From Salpingoeca rosetta (taxonomy: Eukaryota > Protista > Choanoflagellata), in assembly GCA_033442325.1 (NCBI GenBank), contig JAWQFM010000015.1, forward strand, positions 1,056,420 through 1,078,123: 21,704 nucleotides of DNA. Direction: 5' to 3'. Within the stretch, counting starts at the first letter, position 1, and every line of letters begins with the position of its first letter. A program made the position numbers and the translations under genes. Shown in pieces: positions 12,149-21,704 of the stretch. The notes below the pieces were generated by a model. It did no database searches. It was not told the DNA's origin and saw only the letters and a program-made list of their open reading frames with translations.

Positions 12149-14085
12149 TCGAGTTCTGAAGTCGTTGCTGTGTGTGAGTGAGCGCGTGCATCTCAGTGAG
12201 AGAGCCAACAACATTGACACACAGTGTACGCACGCAGGCACAGGCAGGTGTGACACTCGGGGAAACAACAACTTCACTTGCTGCCACGTAGTCAAAAACC
12301 TTGGCGCCGGGTAATGTTTTAGCGACTCGCAATTGAACGCGCGCAAGTCCCGCCGCCGTGCCAAAAAGCCATGGAGCAGCTGTTTCCTGTGCCGTCTTGT
12401 GAACTTGTCCGAGTATGCTGGCGGTGTGCCAGCTCCTCAATCGTATGGGGATGTCGTATGGGTCTCTGCTGCTCCACGCCTTGCTGCGCTGCTTGCCATG
12501 CTTCCTTGTGTGCCTGCCTTTTCTCCCGTCGCGCCTTTTTCTGTTTCGACGAGAGAAGGCGACAGTGGAGGAAGTTTGCCCAGCGCTGTTGCCTGTAGCG
12601 CAGAACCCGCCCCGTCTGTACGCAAGCCAGTGTCACTGGGACGCGTACGCCGGGATCGCACCCAACCACGGTTGGTTGGGCAGTCCCCTGACGCAAGCGA
12701 CACTTGCGACGGCGACGGCGACGGCGACGACGGGATCTTGTGCGCCGCTGGCTCTTGGTCAACTTGCCCTTGCTGGCATTCTGATCCGCAACGACCTTGC
12801 CACCATTCTTGTTCTTGGCAGCCCCCTTCGGCTTCTCCTCTACCTGCAGGCAGACGTGTGCTGCGACTCCGTCCGTTACGAAGGACGTCGCTTCCTTTAG
12901 CCGCTCGTGGTCTCGAGGGCGCCTTGGCCTGAAGAAGTCATCAAGGCGAGACCCATCGCCTTGACGGGGTTGTATCTTGAGGAGGCGCAGCGTGGATTTG
13001 GAGAAGCGCAGGTGTCTTGTGCCTCGAAACAGGGGAAGGAGCGGTGGGTGCTTGTAACGGATGTGGCTGCGCAGCAGGAAGACAAGGAGACAAGGTGCAT
13101 GTGAGTGTGTGAGATAGTAGTTGACATGAGCGACGAGCAGTGCACATGGACACATGCATCAGACACACCTGTACTGCCGCAGTGCCTGCTTGACTGCAAA
13201 CACAAAGCCCAGGCGCTCCTCATTTGTCTTGCAATCTGTGAGCAGGTCTCGCAGCTCAGCGTACTCAAGATCATCCTCAACTGAGTCCTTCTCTTGGTCC
13301 TCCTGGTCCTCCTGCTCTTGCTCCTTTGCTTTCTGCCGCACATACCTGAAAGTACGCAGCCAGCGTGCTGGGGCGTGCCTGATGTGGAGTTTCAGGGCTC
13401 CTTGAAGCGTTCGACAGGTCATGTCAAGGAGGTTGTGTGCGATGGCCTTGATCTGTGGTGGCGTGTTGACTGGGGTGGTCGCGTTTGGCATTGTGCGGCT
13501 GACGCCGCGAAGGGCCGATGTCTGCCGCGTGAAGGCTGTTGTGGAGACCTTGAGGGCCTCCCATAGGCCTGGTGCTTGGTAAGGCTGCTTTTTAGCGCGG
13601 ACAGCGCGGCGAGGCTGCTTCGTAGGACGAACAGCGCGGCGAGGCGAGGCCAGCACGCGCTGGGCCTCTCTCGTACTGACATCGTGGGCTGGCACCTTCT
13701 TCTTGCAGATGACAGCGAGCAGCGCATCAACGTCCTCTGGCCCAAAGCCATCGACCTGCGGGATGGCTGATGACTTGCCTTGACCAGGCCCCTTCCTTCG
13801 CCGCCGCCGGCGGCGCTTCCTTTTTCGTTTGCGCTTCTTCTCGCTCTTCTCCTTCTCCTTCTCCTTCTTCTTCTTCTCCTCCTCCTCTTTTCGCTTCTTG
13901 ATTCGCTCTTGGAGCTCGCTCTTCATATCCACTCCCTCTGTGCTCTGTAGCAGCTGCTCCAGCACCTTATCACTCGCCTTGCAGACGAGGTCGCTCACCC
14001 ACTCCACGTGCTCCACACATTCCGCCACACGTGGGTCAAGGCCCAGGCTGGCAAAGGTCCGTGTCACAGAGACAAACTTCTTCAT
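12149..14085 (-). mobile_element. Fanzor1-like (eukaryotic TnpB-family) RNA-guided endonuclease gene, intron-containing, frameshifted near its 3' end, C-terminus in the gap
   Basis: ATG at 14085 (MKKFVSVTRTFASL...). Exon 1 is 14085-13169, GT-AG intron 13168-13067, and exon 2 from 13066 joins in frame (QY|SHIRYKHPPLLPLFRGTRHLRFSKSTLRLL). Motifs: SFVTDGVAAHV (12876-12865, Fanzor1-type TDGV) and VVGCDPGVR (RuvC-I Asp at 12657-12655). After a frameshift at ~12436-12410 comes YSDKFTRRHRKQLLHGFLARRRDL, resembling the bridge-helix region. RuvC-II, zinc finger and RuvC-III are not visible. Confidence 0.8.
13067..13168 (-). other. Spliceosomal intron (102 nt) in the Fanzor gene
   Basis: Donor TACAG|GTGTGT; pyrimidine tract TTGTCTCCTTGTCTTCCTGCTGCGCAG| acceptor. 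Removing it deletes the in-frame TGA at 13161-13159 and fuses two same-frame ORFs. Confidence 0.8.
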
Positions 14086-14310
14086 GCTGAACAAGCCGGT
14101 GAAAATGGAGCTCAGCAAGCAATGGATGGCCTTTTGTTTGGGTTTTGGGTGGGTGTGGTGCCTCGCGCGCGTTCTGCACTCCTCCCGCCGAATTCCCACA
14201 ACCGGCAATGTTTTTGAAAGGCTTCCACGGTGAGGGTTTTTCTATGAGTTGGTTAATCGACACCACCTCCCTGATTTTGCCAACAAACATACAAAAAGGA
14301 AACAACCAAC

Positions 14311-14367
14311 CAAGAAGGAAACAGGCAAACAAGAAGGAAACAGGCAAACAAGAAGGAAACAGGCACA
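14311..14367. repeat. Tandem 19-bp direct repeat x3 (CAAGAAGGAAACAGGCAAA)
   Basis: Units at 14311-14329, 14330-14348 and 14349-14367 (one mismatch), with a degenerate copy just before (~14292-14310). Confidence 0.9.
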
Positions 14368-14397
14368 CAACACCACACACTCTCTTTGAAAAAAAAT

Positions 14398-14446
14398 TAT
14401 GAAGGTGACATGGCGCACGCATGGCGTGCGCCATTTCGCCTTCATA
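14398..14446. repeat. 23-bp inverted repeat (hairpin) upstream of Fanzor
   Basis: TATGAAGGTGACATGGCGCACGC - ATG - GCGTGCGCCATTTCGCCTTCATA: 21 of 23 positions complementary, 3-nt loop. Confidence 0.9.
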
Positions 14447-15182
14447 TCCGCACCTGCGGCCACATATGGGCCAAAATGTGCCGTGCGGCAATAATGTGCC
14501 ACATTGTGATGGGAGGTGGGTATAGCTCATGTGTGCGTGTTTGGGCGTTTGGGCGTGTGTGTGTGAGTGTGCGTGTGTGTGCCTACTTCTGCGTGTGTCC
14601 CTGTTCTTGCACGTGCCCAATGCCTACTAGCCGGCAAGGGCCTGCAGTCCAGACACGTGTGTGCCGTGCTTTCGACGCAGAAAGGCGTAATAGTTGCGAT
14701 ATGCCGACAACTACGACTTGGGGAGGAAACGCCTAGCCGCCAAGAAGCAACGTTCCACCTTCTTAACTACTGACAGGAAACAAAGTACATCCCCACTCGA
14801 CAAAGACGGGAAGGCGCGCTAGACTCTATCTCGGCGCCCCGTTTCTCCTGAACCGACCTGAACTTAANNNNNNNNNNNNNNNNNNNNNNNNNNNNNNNNN
14901 NNNNNNNNNNNNNNNNNNNNNNNNNNNNNNNNNNNNNNNNNNNNNNNNNNNNNNNNNNNNNNNNNNNNNNNNNNNNNNNNNNNNNNNNNNNNNNNNNNNN
15001 NNNNNNNNNNNNNNNNNNNNNNNNNNNNNNNNNNNNNNNNNNNNNNNNNNNNNNNNNNNNNNNNACACACACGGATACACGGATACACGGACACGCACAG
15101 ATACACACAGGCACGCTCCCCCCGCCCTCTCCCCCTCTCTCGCTGTTGCTCGTGCGTACACCTTTCTTTGCCGGCTGCTTAG

Positions 15183-15988
15183 ACTATACTTACGCCACCG
15201 ACGTCTTTGCACCCCCGACCTGCTTGGACGTCAGCCATGAAGCACTGATGCTGATGGCTCGAATAACAGGCCCGTGTGTCCTCAAACGAACGCCAATCCC
15301 ATGCGCCACGTGAACAGCGGCACTGCCCTTCCAAACAGAACGGCACCCCTCACCCGCTTGTGCAACAAACGGGTCACCTTCTCCTCCCTCCCCGTCAGGC
15401 CCTCTGCCTTGGCATGTGCGTTGCTCGTTGGATGGTAAGATGGTGGGTGTCACCTGCGTTCCATCCACTGCGCCGTGCTGTGCAAAAGCATACCTTGCGC
15501 ATGCCACCGCCCGTGTGCTTTCTTCTGAGCTACATCCCTCACTCACTCACACACACACACACACTCTCTCACTCTCACACTCACACACACGCACACACGC
15601 GCGCGCACACACACACACTCACACACACACACACACACTCTCTCACACTCACACACACGCACACACGCGCGCGCACACACACACACTCACACACTCACAC
15701 ACTCACACACACGCACTCACTCACACACACACTCTCTCTCACACTCACACACTCTCTCTCACACTCACACACACGCACACACACACGCGCGCGCGCGCAC
15801 ACACACACACACTCACGCACACCATCTCTCTCCCTGTCTCTCTCCTTGCGCCTGTCACAACGCCAGACATTGATTGCTATTGCCACCACCAACGGCACAC
15901 GGTGTTCGATTCCGTGCACCGCGTGGAGACGCTGGGGCCAGCTTGTAGTCTCCAACGTGCGACGCTGGAATGACCGATGAGGCGGCAG
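15183..15988 (+). other. Putative exons of an unidentified gene
   Basis: Acceptor-like sites after CA-rich/pyrimidine tracts (CTTAG| 15182, GTCAG| 15398, GCCAG| 15866) and a donor GTAAGA at 15435. No recognisable domain and the frame is uncertain. Confidence 0.3.
15538..15822. repeat. (CA)n compound microsatellite, probably intronic
   Basis: Directly visible CA/CT/CG dinucleotide mosaic, followed by a pyrimidine tract and CAG. Confidence 0.9.
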
Positions 15989-16841
15989 NNNNNNNNNNNN
16001 NNNNNNNNNNNNNNNNNNNNNNNNNNNNNNNNNNNNNNNNNNNNNNNNNNNNNNNNNNNNNNNNNNNNNNNNNNNNNNNNNNNNNNNNNNNNNNNNNNNN
16101 NNNNNNNNNNNNNNNNNNNNNNNNNNNNNNNNNNNNNNNNNNNNNNNNNNNNNNNNNNNNNNNNNNNNNNNNNNNNNNNNNNNNNNNNNNNNNNNNNNNN
16201 NNNNNNNNNNNNNNNNNNNNNNNNNNNNNNNNNNNNNNNNNNNNNNNNNNNNNNNNNNNNNNNNNNNNNNNNNNNNNNNNNNNNNNNNNNNNNNNNNNNN
16301 NNNNNNNNNNNNNNNNNNNNNNNNNNNNNNNNNNNNNNNNNNNNNNNNNNNCATCACGCCGTTGCAATGTTACAAAAGCACATGGTGGGTGAGACAGGAC
16401 ATCGTCGCTTCGCTCCTCCTTGTCCACATGCGTCGCCCACATCTCGTCCATGTGTTGCACGCGTGCACACCTGATCAGACTCATCACGGGAACTGCCAGA
16501 GCCACACACCCACACATACGTGTTCGCCAACGCCCTCGCATCAATCAGCCATCCGCGACAGTGGCCATCATTTCATCAGCTTCGAAGGAGTGCTGCCAGC
16601 ACAACCCACCCCTCGCCGCTTGTGCGTAACCGCATCACCACCCACCTTCTCCCCCTGGTTGTCGTCTTCGTCGTTGTGGCGGTTCTGCCTGCTGACTGGT
16701 GGCATGCATCGTCGCCCTCAGTTCATATCATGTCCATGTCTCTATCTATTCGTGTCATGTATGTTCAGCCCCCGTGCACCCCTCCCTCCTCACTTACCGC
16801 ATTTTGGTGTTGTGCCACCGCACTTGCTCCTCTGCCTCCAG

Positions 16842-17774
16842 TACATGAACAGCGGTGATTTCACGGCGTGCGTGCTTTCCCTCGGCCACACGGACGCGAG
16901 TGAGGAAGCAACTCTTGCATCCTGCATCTCAGGGTGCCAATCAAGCAACTCAACCTGCCGGTGAGTTGTGAAAGGCTGACGCAGCGGCGTCTTGGAGTGT
17001 CGGGGTGTACGCTGTGTACATACAGCTAACAGCAAGTAGTTGACTATGAACTTGCTATCTGACACGTTTTGTACTCTGTTCGAGATTCCTTCTTGGCAGT
17101 GCTTGCGCCTAAATGCCTATTGGGTGTCATTCTGGTCCTGCATCAGTGCTTACCTCTGCTGCCTGATGGCCATGCATTTTGCTCACAAACTGGCTTTGCT
17201 TGCGTTGCGTTCTGCATTTTGCAGAGCCGACTGTGCTTTGAGCACCAGTGACTTTGTCACAGCGTCCACAACAAGTTCGCCCGCTTCGACTACAACAACA
17301 ACCACAACTACGACCACCACAACAACGACAACTACCACAACAACCACAACAACCACAACAACCACAACGACCACAACAACAACGACAACAACTACAACGA
17401 CAACAACTACAACAACAACCACAACGACTACAACAACAACCACAACAACAACCACGACCACGACAACAACAACCACAACAACCACAACAACAACAACAAC
17501 AACAACAACCACAACAACAACCACAACAACAACAACAACCACAACAACAACCACGACCACGACAACAACAACCACAACAACAACCACGACCACAACAACA
17601 ACCACGACCACAACGACTACGACAACAACCACAACAACAACAACAACCACAACAACAACAACCACAACAACAACAACAACCACAACAACAACAACCACAA
17701 CAACAACAACAACCACAACAACAACCACGACAACCACTACCACCACGACAACAACTACACCTCCGCTGCGTTGA
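16842..17774 (+). CDS. Last two exons of a Cys-rich protein with a mucin-like poly-Thr tail (5' part unresolved)
   Basis: Exon 16842-16960 (CTCCAG| acceptor, GTGAGT donor) and exon 17225-17774 (TTTTGCAG| acceptor) join in phase 2: YMNSGDFTACVLSLGHTDASEEATLASCISGCQSSNSTCR|ADCALSTSDFVTASTTSSPAS(T)157PPLR*. Confidence 0.65.
17289..17759 (+). repeat. (ACN)157 trinucleotide repeat encoding poly-threonine
   Basis: 471 nt made only of ACA/ACC/ACG/ACT triplets. Confidence 0.9.
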
Positions 17775-18497
17775 GCTCTCTTGCACACGACCATATGCTC
17801 ACCAACGCCTTCCAATGCAGCTCATTGCTTCATCAACGCCCATGCCACATTCACATTTACATGTTTTACTTTCGTACTACGCTCCTACGCTCGCTCTCCC
17901 ATTCTCGATGGTCCACGCTTCATTCGTGCCATAGCAACTGCTTCTTTCCGTGTTGTGGTGTGTACTTTTGAGTAACAACCGTCCAATATCTACACCGCCC
18001 AATACCCATCATCCAANNNNNNNNNNNNNNNNNNNNNNNNNNNNNNNNNNNNNNNNNNNNNNNNNNNNNNNNNNNNNNNNNNNNNNNNNNNNNNNNNNNN
18101 NNNNNNNNNNNNNNNNNNNNNNNNNNNNNNNNNNNNNNNNNNNNNNNNNNNNNNNNNNNNNNNNNNNNNNNNNNNNNNNNNNNNNNNNNNNNNNNNNNNN
18201 NNNNNNNNNNNNNNNNNNNNNNNNNNNNNNNNNNNNNNNNNNNNNNNNNNNNNNNNNNNNNNNNNNNNNNNNNNNNNNNNNNNNNNNNNNNNNNNNNNNN
18301 NNNNNNNNNNNNNNNNNNNNNNNNNNNNNNNNNNNNNNNNNNNNNNNNNNNNNNNNNNNNNNNNNNNNNNNNNNNNNNNNNNNNNNNNNNNNNNNNNNNN
18401 NNNNNNNNNNNNNNNNNNNNNNNNNNNNNNNNNNNNNNNNNNNNNNNNNNNNNNNNNNNNNNNNNNNNNNNNNNNNNNNNNNNNNNNNNNNNNNNNN

Positions 18498-20074
18498 CTG
18501 CCGCTGCTGCTGGAAAGAGGGTTCGCGACGAGCACGCACGTGGCCAGGGCGTCCTTGCATGCAAGCAAGTCCCGCAGACTTCGCTTCAACGCACCAACAT
18601 TGGGGCTGCCGCTGTGCCGGCCGTGCGCGCTGCTGTGCAGCGTGGCCCGTTCAAAGTGCACCTGCAGCACAAGCCCGGCCGTTTCGTCCGGGTACATGGC
18701 GTAGTACGACAGCGCCTTGTTGAGGTGGTTCTCTGCCACCTTGCTCGCCTTGCTGGCTGCAGTGCGTGCTGCCGCCGCCGCCCACCGCCGGTGCACGAGA
18801 CCAAGGCGATGGTGCGCCTCCCCGAGCTTCAGCGACACAGCGCGACGCATTGCACTGATCCACGCCGCGTTGTCGTGCCGGCCGGCGGTGGCGGGCGCGG
18901 ACGTGAGGTTGCGGCTGATGTCTGCAAAGATGGCGATGGCGCTGTTGAGGTACGAGTCCACGTGCGTATCGTCGCGAAGGCCGGGGGCAGCACTCGCCAG
19001 CAGCGCCGCAAACCCAAGATGCGTGCCGCCCAGCTCAAGCTGGATCTGGGTCCCACAACTGCGGGTGCACGGCGCGGCGCGCAAGGCAGTCCTTCGCCTG
19101 CTGGTAGTACTGGATGGCGTGCATGTGCAGTTGCGGTCAGCGGTTGACGCGACAGCATGGGGACTGGCACCTGCCGTGCCCATNNNNNNNNNNNNNNNNN
19201 NNNNNNNNNNNNNNNNNNNNNNNNNNNNNNNNNNNNNNNNNNNNNNNNNNNNNNNNNNNNNNNNNNNNNNNNNNNNNNNNNNNNNNNNNNNNNNNNNNNN
19301 NNNNNNNNNNNNNNNNNNNNNNNNNNNNNNNNNNNNNNNNNNNNNNNNNNNNNNNNNNNNNNNNNNNNNNNNNNNNNNNNNNNNNNNNNNNNNNNNNNNN
19401 NNNNNNNNNNNNNNNNNNNNNNNNNNNNNNGGCCCGCTCCCAGATGCAGCCGCGTCCAGCCGTTGCCGTTGCCGAAGCCGGCTATCACCACCACCACCAC
19501 CACCACTACCATCATCACCATCACCACCATCGCCATCGTCGTCGTTGGTGCTGGCTTTCGTGTCCGTGTGGGCGTCGGGTTGTTCTGATGCTGATGGCCG
19601 TGCTGACTTGTCCTTGCTTGCACCGTGCACTGCGCCACTGCCACCACCATCGCCACCACCACCGCCACGACGACGTGCACGCTGTGCTTCCTGCGCGTTC
19701 ATGTGGAGTTGGTTGCGCGCGTAACTGATGCGCATGAGCTTGGCCAGGTTGCAGTTGATGACGGCCTGGTTCACGCGGTCCCGCAGGTTGCGAAACGCCG
19801 CCAGCGCGCGGAAGAAATGCGCACACGCCATTTGCTTCTGCTCTTCAAATTGCGCGGCAGACCAGGCAGTGAGTGCCGGCATCTCCGACAGCTGGTCCAT
19901 CAGCACTTTGGCCATCTCGTTGTGCGCGTTGCCCGTCTGCCGCACCAGCGTCTGCTCCTCCATCAGAGAGGCCTGCGAGTGTGTGTATGGTTTTGTGTGT
20001 GCGTGAGCGATAAGGGGAACAGATGTGCCAGAGACAGGGCAAGAACAAACCAAGAGTCAAATAAGACGAGCAAT

Positions 20075-20128
<54 letters not shown>

Positions 20129-21704
20129 GACACAACCAAGCAACCACAAATGCGCGCACTCCCCCCCATCTCCCCCACGCACACACACGCGCATGCGCAG
20201 GCCACCGCACGTTGTGGATAAAGTCGTAGAGAGCGAGTGCTGCCTTTTGCCAGNNNNNNNNNNNNNNNNNNNNNNNNNNNNNNNNNNNNNNNNNNNNNNN
20301 NNNNNNNNNNNNNNNNNNNNNNNNNNNNNNNNNNNNNNNNNNNNNNNNNNNNNNNNNNNNNNNNNNNNNNNNNNNNNNNNNNNNNNNNNNNNNNNNNNNN
20401 NNNNNNNNNNNNNNNNNNNNNNNNNNNNNNNNNNNNNNNNNNNNNNNNNNNNNNNNNNNNNNNNNNNNNNNNNNNNNNNNNNNNNTTATTGTCGCGGTGC
20501 GCTGCTGCAGCGGCTGTTGTCATGCTGGTGGTGGCCCTGGAGCTGTCACATCACACGCGCGCGTTCAATCAAGCAGCCACACTCCTTCGTCGGCACCACA
20601 TGCCCACACCGCCCTCTTTCCCTGCAGCAGCCACACCTCCTTCGTCGGCACCACATGCCCACACCCGCCCCCTTTCCCTGCAGAAGAAGAAGAAGAAGAA
20701 GAAGAAGAAGAAGAAGAAGAAGAAGAAGAAGAAGAAGAAGAAGAAGAAGAAGAAGAAGAAGAAGATGATGATGATGAGGTGGAGGAGGAGGTGGAGGAGG
20801 AGGTGGTGGTAGTGGTGGTGGTAGTAGAGGAGGAGGTGGTGGTAGTAGAGGAAGAGGTAGTGGAGGAAGAGGTAGTGGAGGATGTGGCGGTGGTGTCCCA
20901 CCGCGCCAGAGCCGCATCCTGCCGTGTGCGGTATGTTGCCTCTGCCATCTGCTGGGGAAGGTGCTGGGGTGCGTCGTGGTGCAGCGCCGCAAGCGCCAGG
21001 AGCGCGTGTGCGGCCAGCGGCAACACTTTACCAAGCAGGTCGTCTTCTTGCTTCACGTGTGTCTGCAGCTGCTCTGCCGCCTTGACGGCAATGATGGGGC
21101 CCGCTGCTGGTGGCGGCGTTGGTGGTGATCGCGATCGCGATGGCGATTGTGTCGAATGTGCTGTCGTTGAATGTGTTGTCGAATGTGTTGCCGTTGTTGT
21201 TGTCGAATGTGTTGTCGTGGTTGTCGTTGTTGTGGTGCGCGATTGGTGGCCGTCCACGTGTTGTCGACCAGCCCTTGATGCATCGCCGCTGCGCTTGCTC
21301 TCCAGCTGTTCATCACCCGCGCCATTGACTCTGCTATCATTGCTCGCTGCACTCCCCCCCCTCACCACCTTCCAGCTTACCACCACTACTGCCATCGCCT
21401 CCAGCTCTTCCGTTGTCATCACCATCCCCATCAGCACCGTCACCATCCCCATCAGCACCTTGACCTCCGCCGTCACCACCGTCATACCACGTGCTTGCTC
21501 GGCGCGCGCCGGTGCGGCACCGCAGGCACAGGTCACAAAAGCGGACGGTGGATCCAAACTTCCCGCGCTGCAACGCAAGCTTGGCCAGCGTTGCGTAATG
21601 GTGTGCGGCGCGCGTGAGCACCAGCTCCAGCAGCTGCCGGCTGTGGCCGTCCTGTGGGTTGTCTGCAATCCACTCCACCGCTGGCTCCAACAGGTCCAAG
21701 GCAA
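18498..21704 (-). CDS. EDRF1: Erythroid differentiation-related factor 1 (EDRF1)-like TPR-like helical protein, partial, multi-exon, with apparent frameshifts
   Basis: EDRF1-like blocks in the expected order: AAHHYATLAKLALQRGKFGSTVRF; LVRQTGNAHNEMAKVLMDQ; FFRALAAFRNLRDRVNQAVINCNLAKLMRI; AIQYYQQAKDCLARRAVHPQLWD-QIQLELGGTHLGFAALL; AHHRLGLVH...AENHLNKA. Intron 20210-19973 (phase 0, FIHN|ASLMEE). Single extra bases in homopolymers at 21354-21361 and ~19048-19050. Start is outside the window and the end is in a gap. Recognised from memory of the family. Confidence 0.8.
20078..20123. repeat. (CA)n microsatellite within the EDRF1-like intron
   Basis: Pure CA run inside predicted intron 19973-20210. 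Confidence 0.9.
20683..20764. repeat. (GAA)n trinucleotide microsatellite
   Basis: Pure GAA run. On the minus strand it reads as poly-Ser in the EDRF1-like frame, or as a pyrimidine tract ending in CTGCAG. Confidence 0.9.

What the first reader, a model, noticed from the sequence alone, without database searches (positions are those of the whole stretch)
12149..14085. Hidden Fanzor1-like RNA-guided nuclease gene split by a spliceosomal intron
Seen: two same-frame minus-strand ORFs, each looking like low-complexity junk, join through a clean 102-nt GT-AG intron into more than 500 aa. The product carries LLP..RHLRFS..TL, SFVTDGV and VVGCDPG in that order. Established: TDGV followed by RuvC-I (G)xDPG is characteristic of Fanzor1, the eukaryotic TnpB descendants guided by an omegaRNA encoded at the element's 3' end. 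Inference: this is a divergent Fanzor1 in a probable choanoflagellate. This copy is frameshifted (~12436-12410, possibly again ~12310), so intact sister copies may exist elsewhere in the genome.
Basis: partly seen in the sequence, partly recalled or inferred. Interest (0 to 1): 0.9.

Follow-up and report, generated by a model that had tools for sequence, protein, structure and literature searches.

The report
Broken Fanzor nuclease gene copy, choanoflagellate
The window holds a disrupted copy, cut off by an assembly gap, of a very divergent Fanzor (eukaryotic TnpB-like, probably RNA-guided) nuclease gene of Salpingoeca rosetta; it is already annotated as a nameless protein, an intact twin lies on another scaffold, and its nearest described relative is a Fanzor family reported from this species in 2013.

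Summary
On the minus strand, ATG 14085, a 102-nt GT-AG intron (13168-13067) and exon 2 give a 554-aa product with RHLRFSKSTL, SFVTDGV and VVGCDPG in that order.

The gene is not hidden. This exact spliced model is GenBank PTSG_06033, a hypothetical protein of Salpingoeca rosetta.

A 98%-identical paralogue on contig C6, PTSG_11622, has 722 aa in 4 exons and reads through where the window copy fails. It carries the missing C-terminus:
- FWGD at the old RuvC-II site
- the alternative glutamate, in TSEYRSSK
- a zinc ribbon, CC...CxxC
- RDRD, the RuvC-III aspartate

Evidence for TnpB/Fanzor identity:
- Pfam PF07282 scores over its cut-off.
- A family profile finds only TnpB, Cas12 and mimivirus Fanzor2 structures above chance level.
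- ESM Atlas neighbours are TnpB/Fanzor clusters.

The Fanzor1 subtype is not supported. The nearest described relative is SAl-2 of Bao & Jurka 2013, which that paper lists under Fanzor2.

Against C6, the window copy lacks one base at about 12408 and one at about 12334, has lost FWGD, and runs into the gap 19 nt into exon 3. Both copies lie inside a segmental duplication of at least 9.4 kb, not a delimited transposon.

No guide RNA (omegaRNA) could be defined, and AlphaFold failed twice.

Verdict: a new member of a known kind, of modest interest.

The parts
13169..14085 (-). Exon 1 (ATG at 14085). N-terminal extension of about 305 aa, helical and highly charged.
   Evidence: Identical to residues 1-305 of the annotated protein P0001 = PTSG_06033.
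13795..13899 (-). Lys/Arg-rich stretch (KKRKEEEEKKKK...RKRKRKRRRRRRRKG), which looks like a nuclear localisation signal.
   Evidence: Read directly from the sequence. The NLS function is inferred, not tested. About 60% of Fanzor ORFs carry a predicted NLS (PMC10530073).
13067..13168 (-). Spliceosomal intron 1, 102 nt, GT...AG, phase 2. It contains an in-frame TGA 6 nt after the donor.
   Evidence: The same junction is used in both annotated models, P0001 and P0002. An RNA-like contig starts exactly at the equivalent exon boundary of the C6 copy.
12322..13066 (-). Exon 2 as annotated. It encodes the putative WED-like segment and RuvC-I. The stop at 12321-12319 is reached only because of the frameshift.
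   Evidence: 98.6% identical in DNA to the C6 copy.
12865..12885 (-). SFVTDGV motif.
   Evidence: Aligns with SIRTDGY of SAl-2. Also present in SPu-1.
12649..12669 (-). VVGCDPG, the RuvC-I motif. The catalytic Asp codon is at 12657-12655 (D443 of P0001, D462 of P0002).
   Evidence: Aligns with VVGVDPGTR of SAl-2, VVSIDPGVRVP of SAl-1 and VVGVDLG of PDB 8hr5.
12408..12409 (-). First frameshift: one base is absent here compared with the intact C6 copy.
   Evidence: L007 position 7288 has an extra C. DNA-like contigs laid on the C6 copy show no such deletion.
12333..12335 (-). Second one-base deletion, with neighbouring substitutions, compared with C6.
   Evidence: L007 7213-7215.
12168..12293 (-). 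Strongly diverged patch. It covers the end of exon 2, where C6 reads FWGDAAS and the window reads FDYVAAS, and the counterpart of intron 2.
12149..12167 (-). First 19 nt of the exon 3 counterpart, cut off by the assembly gap.
   Evidence: window 12182-12149 aligns with L007 7090-7057; exon 3 of C6 starts at 7075.
11184..12148 (.). Assembly gap of 965 N. It is expected to hide the rest of exon 3, intron 3, exon 4 (alternative glutamate, zinc ribbon, RuvC-III) and any 3' guide-RNA region.
   Evidence: The C6 copy continues for 670 nt beyond the equivalent point. DNA contigs show a second genomic variant of exon 4, 6823 G>T.

Best explanation
The window carries PTSG_06033 of Salpingoeca rosetta. 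It is one of two assembled near-identical copies of a highly divergent Fanzor gene, that is, a eukaryotic TnpB homologue. A third assembled copy, on C28, is a decayed fragment.

The intact copy is PTSG_11622 on contig C6: 722 aa in 4 exons with 3 GT-AG introns. Its parts, in order, are:
- a charged N-terminal extension of about 325 aa with NLS-like K/R runs
- a segment with the TDG motif
- RuvC-I (D462)
- a helical insertion
- the 'rearranged' RuvC-II typical of Fanzors: Gly at the canonical site in FWGD, and the alternative Glu E621 in TSEYRSSK
- a zinc ribbon whose first knuckle reads CC rather than CxxC
- RuvC-III (D656)

By analogy with characterised Fanzors, the intact protein would enter the nucleus, bind a guide RNA transcribed from the 3' end of its locus, and cut double-stranded DNA with its single RuvC site. 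That mechanism is inferred, not shown.

The window copy as assembled cannot do this. Two one-base deletions and a diverged patch remove everything after RuvC-I, and the assembly gap hides the rest.

The family is a distant paralogue of SAl-2, one of the two Fanzor families already described from this species. The two copies arose by duplication of a block of at least 9.4 kb that also holds other genes. They are not discrete transposon insertions.
For: Gene structure and identity with the annotated models.

Intact C-terminus in the C6 copy.

Family membership:
- Pfam PF07282 (Cas12f1-like TNB) scores 27.3-27.9 bits against a cut-off of 26.3.
- A profile of this family plus SAl-2, searched against the PDB, finds at E<0.05 only TnpB/Cas12-type chains: a designed TnpB-like nuclease at 8e-5, mimivirus L79 at 3.4e-4, ISDra2 TnpB at 7e-3. 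E621 falls on E467 of L79, which Jiang 2023 showed to be catalytic.
- ESM Atlas: the top hits score 0.96 with 191 shared features, and all of the best ten are TnpB/Fanzor-type clusters. Structural TM is about 0.5 over residues 325-690.
- BLASTP to the SAl-2 protein PTSG_12014 gives 3e-15, plus the DPG block at 8e-6. Both share the unusual [ST][ST]KY..CC knuckle.

SAl-1 and SAl-2 are published Fanzors of this strain.

Frameshift positions. Segmental duplication.

Selection: 11 synonymous against 8 non-synonymous differences over 524 codons, pN/pS 0.23.

Expression: contigs in runs guessed to be RNA lie on exons only.
Against: - Nothing in the window itself scores as TnpB. P0001 has no Pfam hit, so the assignment rests on the paralogue.
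- Sequence searches of 1.84 billion and 5.8 billion proteins found only the two copies themselves.
- PDB searches with single sequences were blank.
- AlphaFold gave unusable models twice, pLDDT 44 and 42, so there is no fold-level confirmation from a model of my own.
- The first zinc-knuckle Cys is replaced by Thr.
- No omegaRNA, no terminal repeats and no partner transposase were found.
- The two deletions lie within 260 nt of an assembly gap. Independent DNA contigs show only the undeleted form, so the 'broken' state may be partly an assembly artefact.
Confidence: 0.85

Rival explanations
1. One reading: this is a Fanzor1, a member of the purely eukaryotic clade that is carried by Mariner, Helitron, MuDR and similar transposons.
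For: The protein is long, with a large N-terminal extension, and the gene has several introns. The TDG motif ahead of RuvC-I also occurs in the Fanzor1 prototype SPu-1. No HTH_OrfB domain and no IS607 serine recombinase were found. SAl-2 is absent from the one alignment file in which SAl-1 was found, so its published Fanzor2 label may be weakly founded.
Against: The nearest described relative, SAl-2, is listed as Fanzor2. Saito 2023 also places the choanoflagellate Fanzors in Fz2. The DPGxRxP form of RuvC-I is shared with SAl-1, which hits mimivirus L79 at 1e-12. The family profile finds L79 and TnpB but no Fanzor1 structure. No eukaryotic transposase or terminal repeat lies beside the gene.
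Confidence: 0.2
2. The window copy is intact in the real genome. On this reading the two one-base deletions and the diverged patch are low-quality or mis-joined sequence at a contig end, and exons 3-4 simply sit in the gap.
For: All the damage lies within 260 nt of the gap, while the 1.7 kb upstream differs from C6 by only about 1%. DNA-like contigs from two studies show no deletion at either site and do show a second exon 4 variant. Word depth suggests 3-4 genomic copies against 2 assembled. pN/pS of 0.23 argues against long decay.
Against: Contigs drop minority variants, so absence from them proves nothing (the tool's own caveat). The FWGD to FDYV change is a cluster of substitutions rather than a homopolymer slip. 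Contigs end at about the point where the two copies diverge, as expected if both forms exist in the reads.
Confidence: 0.3
3. The gene is no longer mobile. It is a host-retained ('domesticated') Fanzor derivative with a cellular role.
For: It is low in copy number and was duplicated only as part of a larger block together with other genes. It has three introns and pN/pS of 0.23. Exon-only contigs appear in RNA-like runs. The catalytic residues are kept. No transposase or terminal repeats were found.
Against: No orthologue turned up in any other organism among 1.84 billion representatives, which include eukaryotic proteomes. A decayed fragment on C28 and the disrupted window copy look like the usual turnover of a mobile or selfish gene. 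Both 3' flanks are hidden by gaps, so element ends could not be sought.
Confidence: 0.15
4. There is no nuclease here. The motifs are chance matches in a low-complexity protein.
For: The protein is rich in charged low-complexity runs. The window-encoded part has no significant hit of its own.
Against: Four lines of evidence converge on TnpB/Fanzor: Pfam over its cut-off, the profile search of the PDB, ESM Atlas, and homology to a published Fanzor. D, E, zinc ribbon and RD follow in the right order and at the right spacing.
Confidence: 0.03

Closest known systems
SAl-2 Fanzor family of Salpingoeca sp. ATCC 50818 (Bao & Jurka 2013, PMC3627910). Annotated proteins PTSG_12014 and PTSG_04012, at loci on C8 and C12, with relatives on C2 and C10.
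   Same: Same genome. Both genes have 4 exons. The motif order is the same..TDG.., VVGxDPGxRxP, VFxGD, RGxG..P..LR, E[YF]R[ST][ST]KY..CC, CxxCG, DRD. Identity is 32% over 136 aa (E 3e-15). Both share the atypical CC first zinc knuckle.
   Different: Only about 30% identical. This family is 722 aa against 498, with an N-terminal extension of about 325 aa, and it lacks SAl-2's CCHC zinc knuckle. The intron positions differ. It is not among the two families listed for this species in 2013.
Acanthamoeba polyphaga mimivirus Fanzor2 (ApmFNuc, 'TnpB-like protein L79', PDB 9b0l)
   Same: Rearranged RuvC site. The alternative Glu (E467 in L79) aligns with E621, followed by [ST][ST]K, a zinc ribbon and DRD. 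ApmFNuc also has an N-terminal NLS.
   Different: L79 has no introns, lies in an IS607 element with a TnpA, has a defined 3' guide RNA and has shown cleavage activity. None of these was found or tested here. Similarity is confined to about 50 residues (E 3.4e-4).
Spizellomyces punctatus Fanzor1 (SPu-1 / SpuFz1)
   Same: A eukaryotic TnpB homologue with a long N-terminal region and a TDG motif ahead of RuvC-I.
   Different: SPu-1 is a single-exon gene in a 2.1-kb element with 33-bp terminal inverted repeats and TA duplications, present in many copies. Its RuvC-I reads VIDPNKRD. It gave no detectable match to the family profile in the PDB search.
Bacterial TnpB (ISDra2; PDB 8bf8, 8h1j) and Cas12f
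   Same: Single RuvC domain split by a zinc ribbon. Pfam PF07282 matches, and the profile hit has E 7e-3.
   Different: ISDra2 TnpB keeps the canonical RuvC-II glutamate. It is prokaryotic, has no introns and is about 400 aa long.

Membership tests
Fanzor/TnpB superfamily | The Bao & Jurka motif: D-X(125-275)-[TS][TS]-X-X-[C4 zinc finger]-X(5-50)-RD | tested here: met
   In the intact paralogue P0002: D462, then 161 residues, S624-S625, K-Y, the finger, then RDRD at 653-656. One deviation: the first Cys position holds Thr, and the cysteines are C630, C631, C646 and C649. In the window copy only the D is present. The rest is frameshifted away or lies in the gap.
Fanzor/TnpB superfamily | Significant match to the TnpB/Cas12f zinc-ribbon (TNB) profile PF07282 | tested here: met
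   P0002 scores 27.3 bits and exon 4 alone 27.9 bits, against a cut-off of 26.3. The whole-genome scan also flags C6:2025739-2025876. The window protein P0001 has no hit.
Fanzor/TnpB superfamily | Rearranged RuvC-II: an inert residue at the canonical Glu position and an alternative Glu about 45 residues downstream (Jiang 2023) | tested here: met
   P0002 has G585 in FWGD, and E621 lies 36 residues downstream. E621 aligns with the catalytic E467 of mimivirus L79.
Fanzor/TnpB superfamily | TnpB-like fold (WED, REC, split RuvC) | tested here: inconclusive
   My two AlphaFold models were unusable, with pLDDT 44 and 42. The ESM Atlas's own low-confidence model gives TM 0.43-0.56 to TnpB/Fanzor clusters.
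Fanzor/TnpB superfamily | A guide RNA (omegaRNA/fRNA) encoded at the 3' end of the locus | tested here: inconclusive
   Only 173 nt of 3' flank exist before a 14-kb gap in C6, and none exists in the window. The fold z-score is -0.71. The C28 fragment ends inside exon 4. RNA-like contigs stop at the stop codon.
Fanzor/TnpB superfamily | RNA-guided double-stranded DNA cleavage | not testable with these tools
   This needs biochemistry.
Fanzor1 | Placement in the eukaryote-only Fanzor1 clade | not tested
   No reference Fanzor1 sequence could be brought into the tools. Indirect signs point elsewhere: the nearest relative SAl-2 is listed as Fanzor2, and the profile reaches L79 and TnpB but no Fanzor1 chain.
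Fanzor1 | Carried by a eukaryotic DNA transposon (Mariner, Helitron, IS4-like, Sola, MuDR, hAT) with recognisable ends | tested here: not met
   No transposase domain lies next to the gene. The left neighbour is a convergent cadherin gene. The copies share a block of at least 9.4 kb that includes other genes. Gaps limit this test.
Fanzor2 | N-terminal HTH_OrfB domain and TnpB-like size | tested here: not met
   No PF12323 or PF01385 hit at E<=1. The protein is 722 aa with an unrelated N-terminal half.
Fanzor2 | IS607-type element with a serine-recombinase TnpA | tested here: not met
   No Resolvase (PF00239) match anywhere in the assembly. Many published Fanzor2 elements also lack TnpA.

The most novel reading that the evidence does not exclude
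PTSG_11622 and PTSG_06033 represent a Fanzor lineage that has left its transposon and is kept by the choanoflagellate as a host gene. The signs are: low copy number, three introns, duplication only along with neighbouring genes, pN/pS of about 0.2, probable transcription, an intact catalytic triad, and a new 325-aa N-terminal domain. If so, it would be an RNA-guided nuclease co-opted for a cellular function in a close relative of animals.
Probability: 0.12. Interest if true: 0.6.

Novelty: new member of a known kind. Interest (0 to 1): 0.27.

Why it matters
Fanzors are the eukaryotic RNA-guided nucleases now being developed as compact genome editors, and choanoflagellates are the closest unicellular relatives of animals.

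Two Fanzor families were already described from this very strain in 2013, so a third, very divergent lineage is an incremental addition. It names two 'hypothetical proteins' and extends the SAl-2-like clade, which has an unusual zinc knuckle. It also adds a case of an intron-bearing, low-copy Fanzor with signs of selection.

It does not change what is known about how Fanzors work.

Tried and rejected
- **Pfam on the window's own exons:** nothing real.
- **PDB sequence searches:** exon 2, exon 4, P0002 and the SAl-2 protein each gave no significant TnpB hit. Only the profile search worked.
- **Large protein searches:** The search for homologous proteins with exon 2 and with P0002 residues 330-722, and the search of 1.84 billion representatives, returned only the gene's own two copies.
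- **AlphaFold2:** single sequence gave pLDDT 44 and the 4-row alignment gave 42. I ran no fold search, because matches from such models would be meaningless.
- **The search for related loci in viral contigs:** the family alignment had no stretch conserved enough, and SAl-1 found nothing. No Fanzor2 alignment could therefore be built for a profile-profile test or a tree.
- **Published lists:** supplements of Saito 2023 hold no Salpingoeca entry or accession. Those of Jiang 2023 are not held. No paper names PTSG_11622 or PTSG_06033.
- **Read laying:** only assembled contigs were on offer, so no splice joints, transcript ends or strand could be read.
- **MULE context:** Window 2433-3638 gives only Sushi and EGF at E<=0.001, so I dropped the idea.
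- **3' RNA fold of the C6 copy:** not more stable than shuffled sequence.
- **C28 copy as a guide to element ends:** it is an internal fragment only.

Full report
**1. What is in the window**

On the minus strand, ORF 13159..14208 and ORF 12319..13155 lie in the same frame. Exon 1 runs from the ATG at 14085 to 13169. It is followed by GTGTGT..., and a pyrimidine-rich tract ends in CAG at 13067. That makes a 102-nt GT-AG intron of phase 2, with an in-frame TGA six bases into it.

The window has nine N gaps. One of them, 11184-12148, begins only 19 nt into what turns out to be exon 3.

**2. The gene is already annotated**

I searched 1.84 billion representative proteins with exon 2 of the sister copy. 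Its cluster has two members:
- PTSG_06033 (EGD74668.1 / XP_004992925.1), which is the window gene
- PTSG_11622 (EGD75924.1 / XP_004998100.1, 722 aa)

Both are 'hypothetical protein' of Salpingoeca rosetta ATCC 50818. The organism guess (a choanoflagellate) was right, and the intron is the annotators' too. The gene is unnamed rather than hidden.

**3. The sister copy supplies the missing half**

The window lies on contig C15 of the assembly; C6, C28 and the other C numbers below are further contigs of the same assembly. A six-frame search of that assembly found a 98% copy on C6 and a decayed fragment on C28.

In the C6 copy the frame stays open where the window fails. Three GT-AG introns of 102, 80 and 113 nt join four exons into 722 codons. 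My model is identical to P0002.

Downstream of VVGCDPG (D462) it reads ...KVFWGDAAS / NGFRTRGAGLHGPTGQLRKHISKLLDVQ / TTSEYRSSKYTYCCGVQGQYSSATRLTRCPACGVARDRDVVGATAI.... This fits the Bao & Jurka definition D-X(125-275)-[TS][TS]-X-X-[zinc finger]-X(5-50)-RD. The one deviation is that the first Cys position holds Thr and the first knuckle reads CC.

**4. Tests of family membership**

- Pfam PF07282 (Cas12f1-like TNB) scores 27.3-27.9 bits against a cut-off of 26.3, on P0002 and on exon 4 alone. The same family, scanned over the genome, flags this C6 locus.
- I built a profile from P0002 residues 325-722, the SAl-2 protein and a C2 relative, and searched it against all PDB sequences. At E<0.05 it returned only TnpB/Cas12-type chains: a designed TnpB-like nuclease at 8e-5, mimivirus 'TnpB-like protein L79' at 3.4e-4, a 497-aa 'Transposase' (8hr5) whose VVGVDLG aligns with the DPG motif, and ISDra2 TnpB at 7e-3.
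- In that alignment E621 falls on E467 of L79. Jiang et al. showed E467 to be the essential 'alternative' RuvC-II glutamate of Fanzors, with Gly or Pro at the canonical site. Here the canonical site is G585 in FWGD.
- ESM Atlas feature neighbours score 0.96 with 191 shared features. All of the best ten are TnpB/Fanzor-type clusters, mostly from giant viruses. The Atlas's own model aligns to TnpB clusters at TM of about 0.5.

Searches with single sequences and my two AlphaFold runs failed. The family is very divergent, and the assignment rests on profile-level and motif-level evidence.

**5. Which Fanzor**

Bao & Jurka 2013 list two families for this very strain, SAl-1 and SAl-2, and mark both as Fanzor2.
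- SAl-1 corresponds to the C14 and C29 loci. It hits L79 at 1e-12.
- SAl-2 corresponds to the C8 and C12 loci, annotated as PTSG_12014 and PTSG_04012.

P0002 matches the SAl-2 protein at 3e-15 (32% over 136 aa), plus the DPG block. It shares SAl-2's motif order and its odd [ST][ST]KY..CC knuckle. The window family is therefore a third, distant paralogue of SAl-2.

I could not build a tree with reference sets. In addition, SAl-2 does not appear in the one alignment file where SAl-1 was found. The subtype therefore stays open. The available evidence leans away from Fanzor1. Saito 2023 also places the choanoflagellate Fanzors in Fz2.

**6. State of the window copy**

Over 1.7 kb the two copies differ by about 1%, plus two in-frame indels of 27 and 30 nt. 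After that the window lacks one base at about 12408/9 and one at about 12334. From 12293 to 12183 it is barely alignable: FWGDAAS becomes FDYVAAS, and intron 2 differs. The annotated protein therefore ends at a frameshift-induced stop (12321-12319), without the alternative Glu, the zinc ribbon or RuvC-III.

One caution applies. All of this damage lies within 260 nt of the gap.

I laid contigs of four public runs on the C6 copy.
- In the two DNA-like runs there is no deletion at either site.
- Those runs hold a second exon 4 variant (6823 G>T).
- Their word depth is about 20 on the C6-specific 57 nt, against 60-70 on the flanks. That suggests 3-4 genomic copies where the assembly shows two.

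These are contigs, not reads, so this is suggestive only.

Between the two copies there are 11 synonymous and 8 non-synonymous changes over 524 codons, giving pN/pS of 0.23. This points to purifying selection since the duplication.

**7. Expression**

No run is on record as RNA. In two runs guessed to be RNA, contigs lie only on exons 1, 2 and 4. One of them starts exactly at the exon 1 / intron 1 boundary with 7 unaligned letters, and another spans almost exactly exon 4. No joint was reported. This is weak support for transcription and splicing.

**8. Context**

The left neighbour is a large plus-strand Sushi/EGF/cadherin gene, convergent with the Fanzor gene.

Window 12294-23777 is collinear with C6:2026172-2037083 at 88-99% identity. 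Part of it (16683-23503) recurs on C4, and one 686-nt piece has four copies. The two Fanzor copies are thus part of a segmental duplication with other genes.

I saw no terminal repeats, no neighbouring transposase and no serine recombinase anywhere in the genome.

The C28 copy is an internal fragment of about 850 nt with stops.

No guide RNA could be defined. Only 173 nt of 3' flank exist, and their fold is unremarkable.

**9. Mechanism**

This part is inferred from established Fanzor work (PMC10432273, PMC10530073).
- The intact paralogue would be imported into the nucleus through its K/R runs.
- It would bind an RNA from its own 3' end.
- It would cut matching DNA next to a short motif, using D462, E621 and D656.

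Shown here: residue conservation and family membership. Not shown: the RNA, any activity, any mobility.

**10. Verdict**

It is wrong on 'hidden', and unsupported on 'Fanzor1'. This is a new member of a known kind, and Fanzors were already known in this species. Interest is modest.

Noticed in passing
window 2433-11183 (+): A large multi-exon gene with Sushi, EGF and several cadherin domains runs into the same gap from the other side, convergent with the Fanzor gene. No MULE domain appeared at E<=0.001 in 2433-3638.
   Followed up: partly
window 12294-21704 and beyond; C6:2026172-2037083; C4:693055-699668; C6:2009894-2011116: A gap-ridden segmental duplication at 88-99% identity. C15 and C6 share at least 9.4 kb, including the Fanzor gene. 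C4 and a second C6 site share only the part from window 16683 onward. The 686-nt piece 18498-19183 has four copies.
   Followed up: partly
L007 8505-8586 (C6 copy) against its flanks: In DNA-like runs, word depth on the C6-specific 57 nt is about 20 against 60-70 on the flanks. This hints at 3-4 genomic copies of the gene, with only two assembled.
   Followed up: no
L007 6800-6802 and 6823 (exon 4 of the C6 copy): RNA-like contigs of two studies carry three adjacent differences (6800-6802) that the DNA-like contigs lack. 6823 G>T occurs in both kinds of run. This could be an unassembled copy, a strain difference or something else; it is unexplained.
   Followed up: no
L018/L019 (C12, C8), L013 (C2), C10:1411872-1412030: The SAl-2 family has more loci than the three copies reported in 2013. 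Its N-terminal half carries a retroviral-type CCHC zinc knuckle (PF00098, 22.4 bits) that the window family lacks.
   Followed up: partly
L011 (C14:435939-439145): The PF07282 match at the SAl-1 locus lies in an open frame of 813 aa, much longer than the published 400 aa. Other readers of this scan flagged an EXO1/XPG-Fanzor fusion elsewhere in this genome, which may be the same locus.
   Followed up: no
window 12168-12290, 14300-14400, 15500-15990; L007 6440-6530, 7076-7155, 6878-6990: CA-rich and CACTCA-type microsatellites fill the introns and flanks of the gene. They read as THTHS... in translation, and they coincide with contig breaks and assembly gaps.
   Followed up: no
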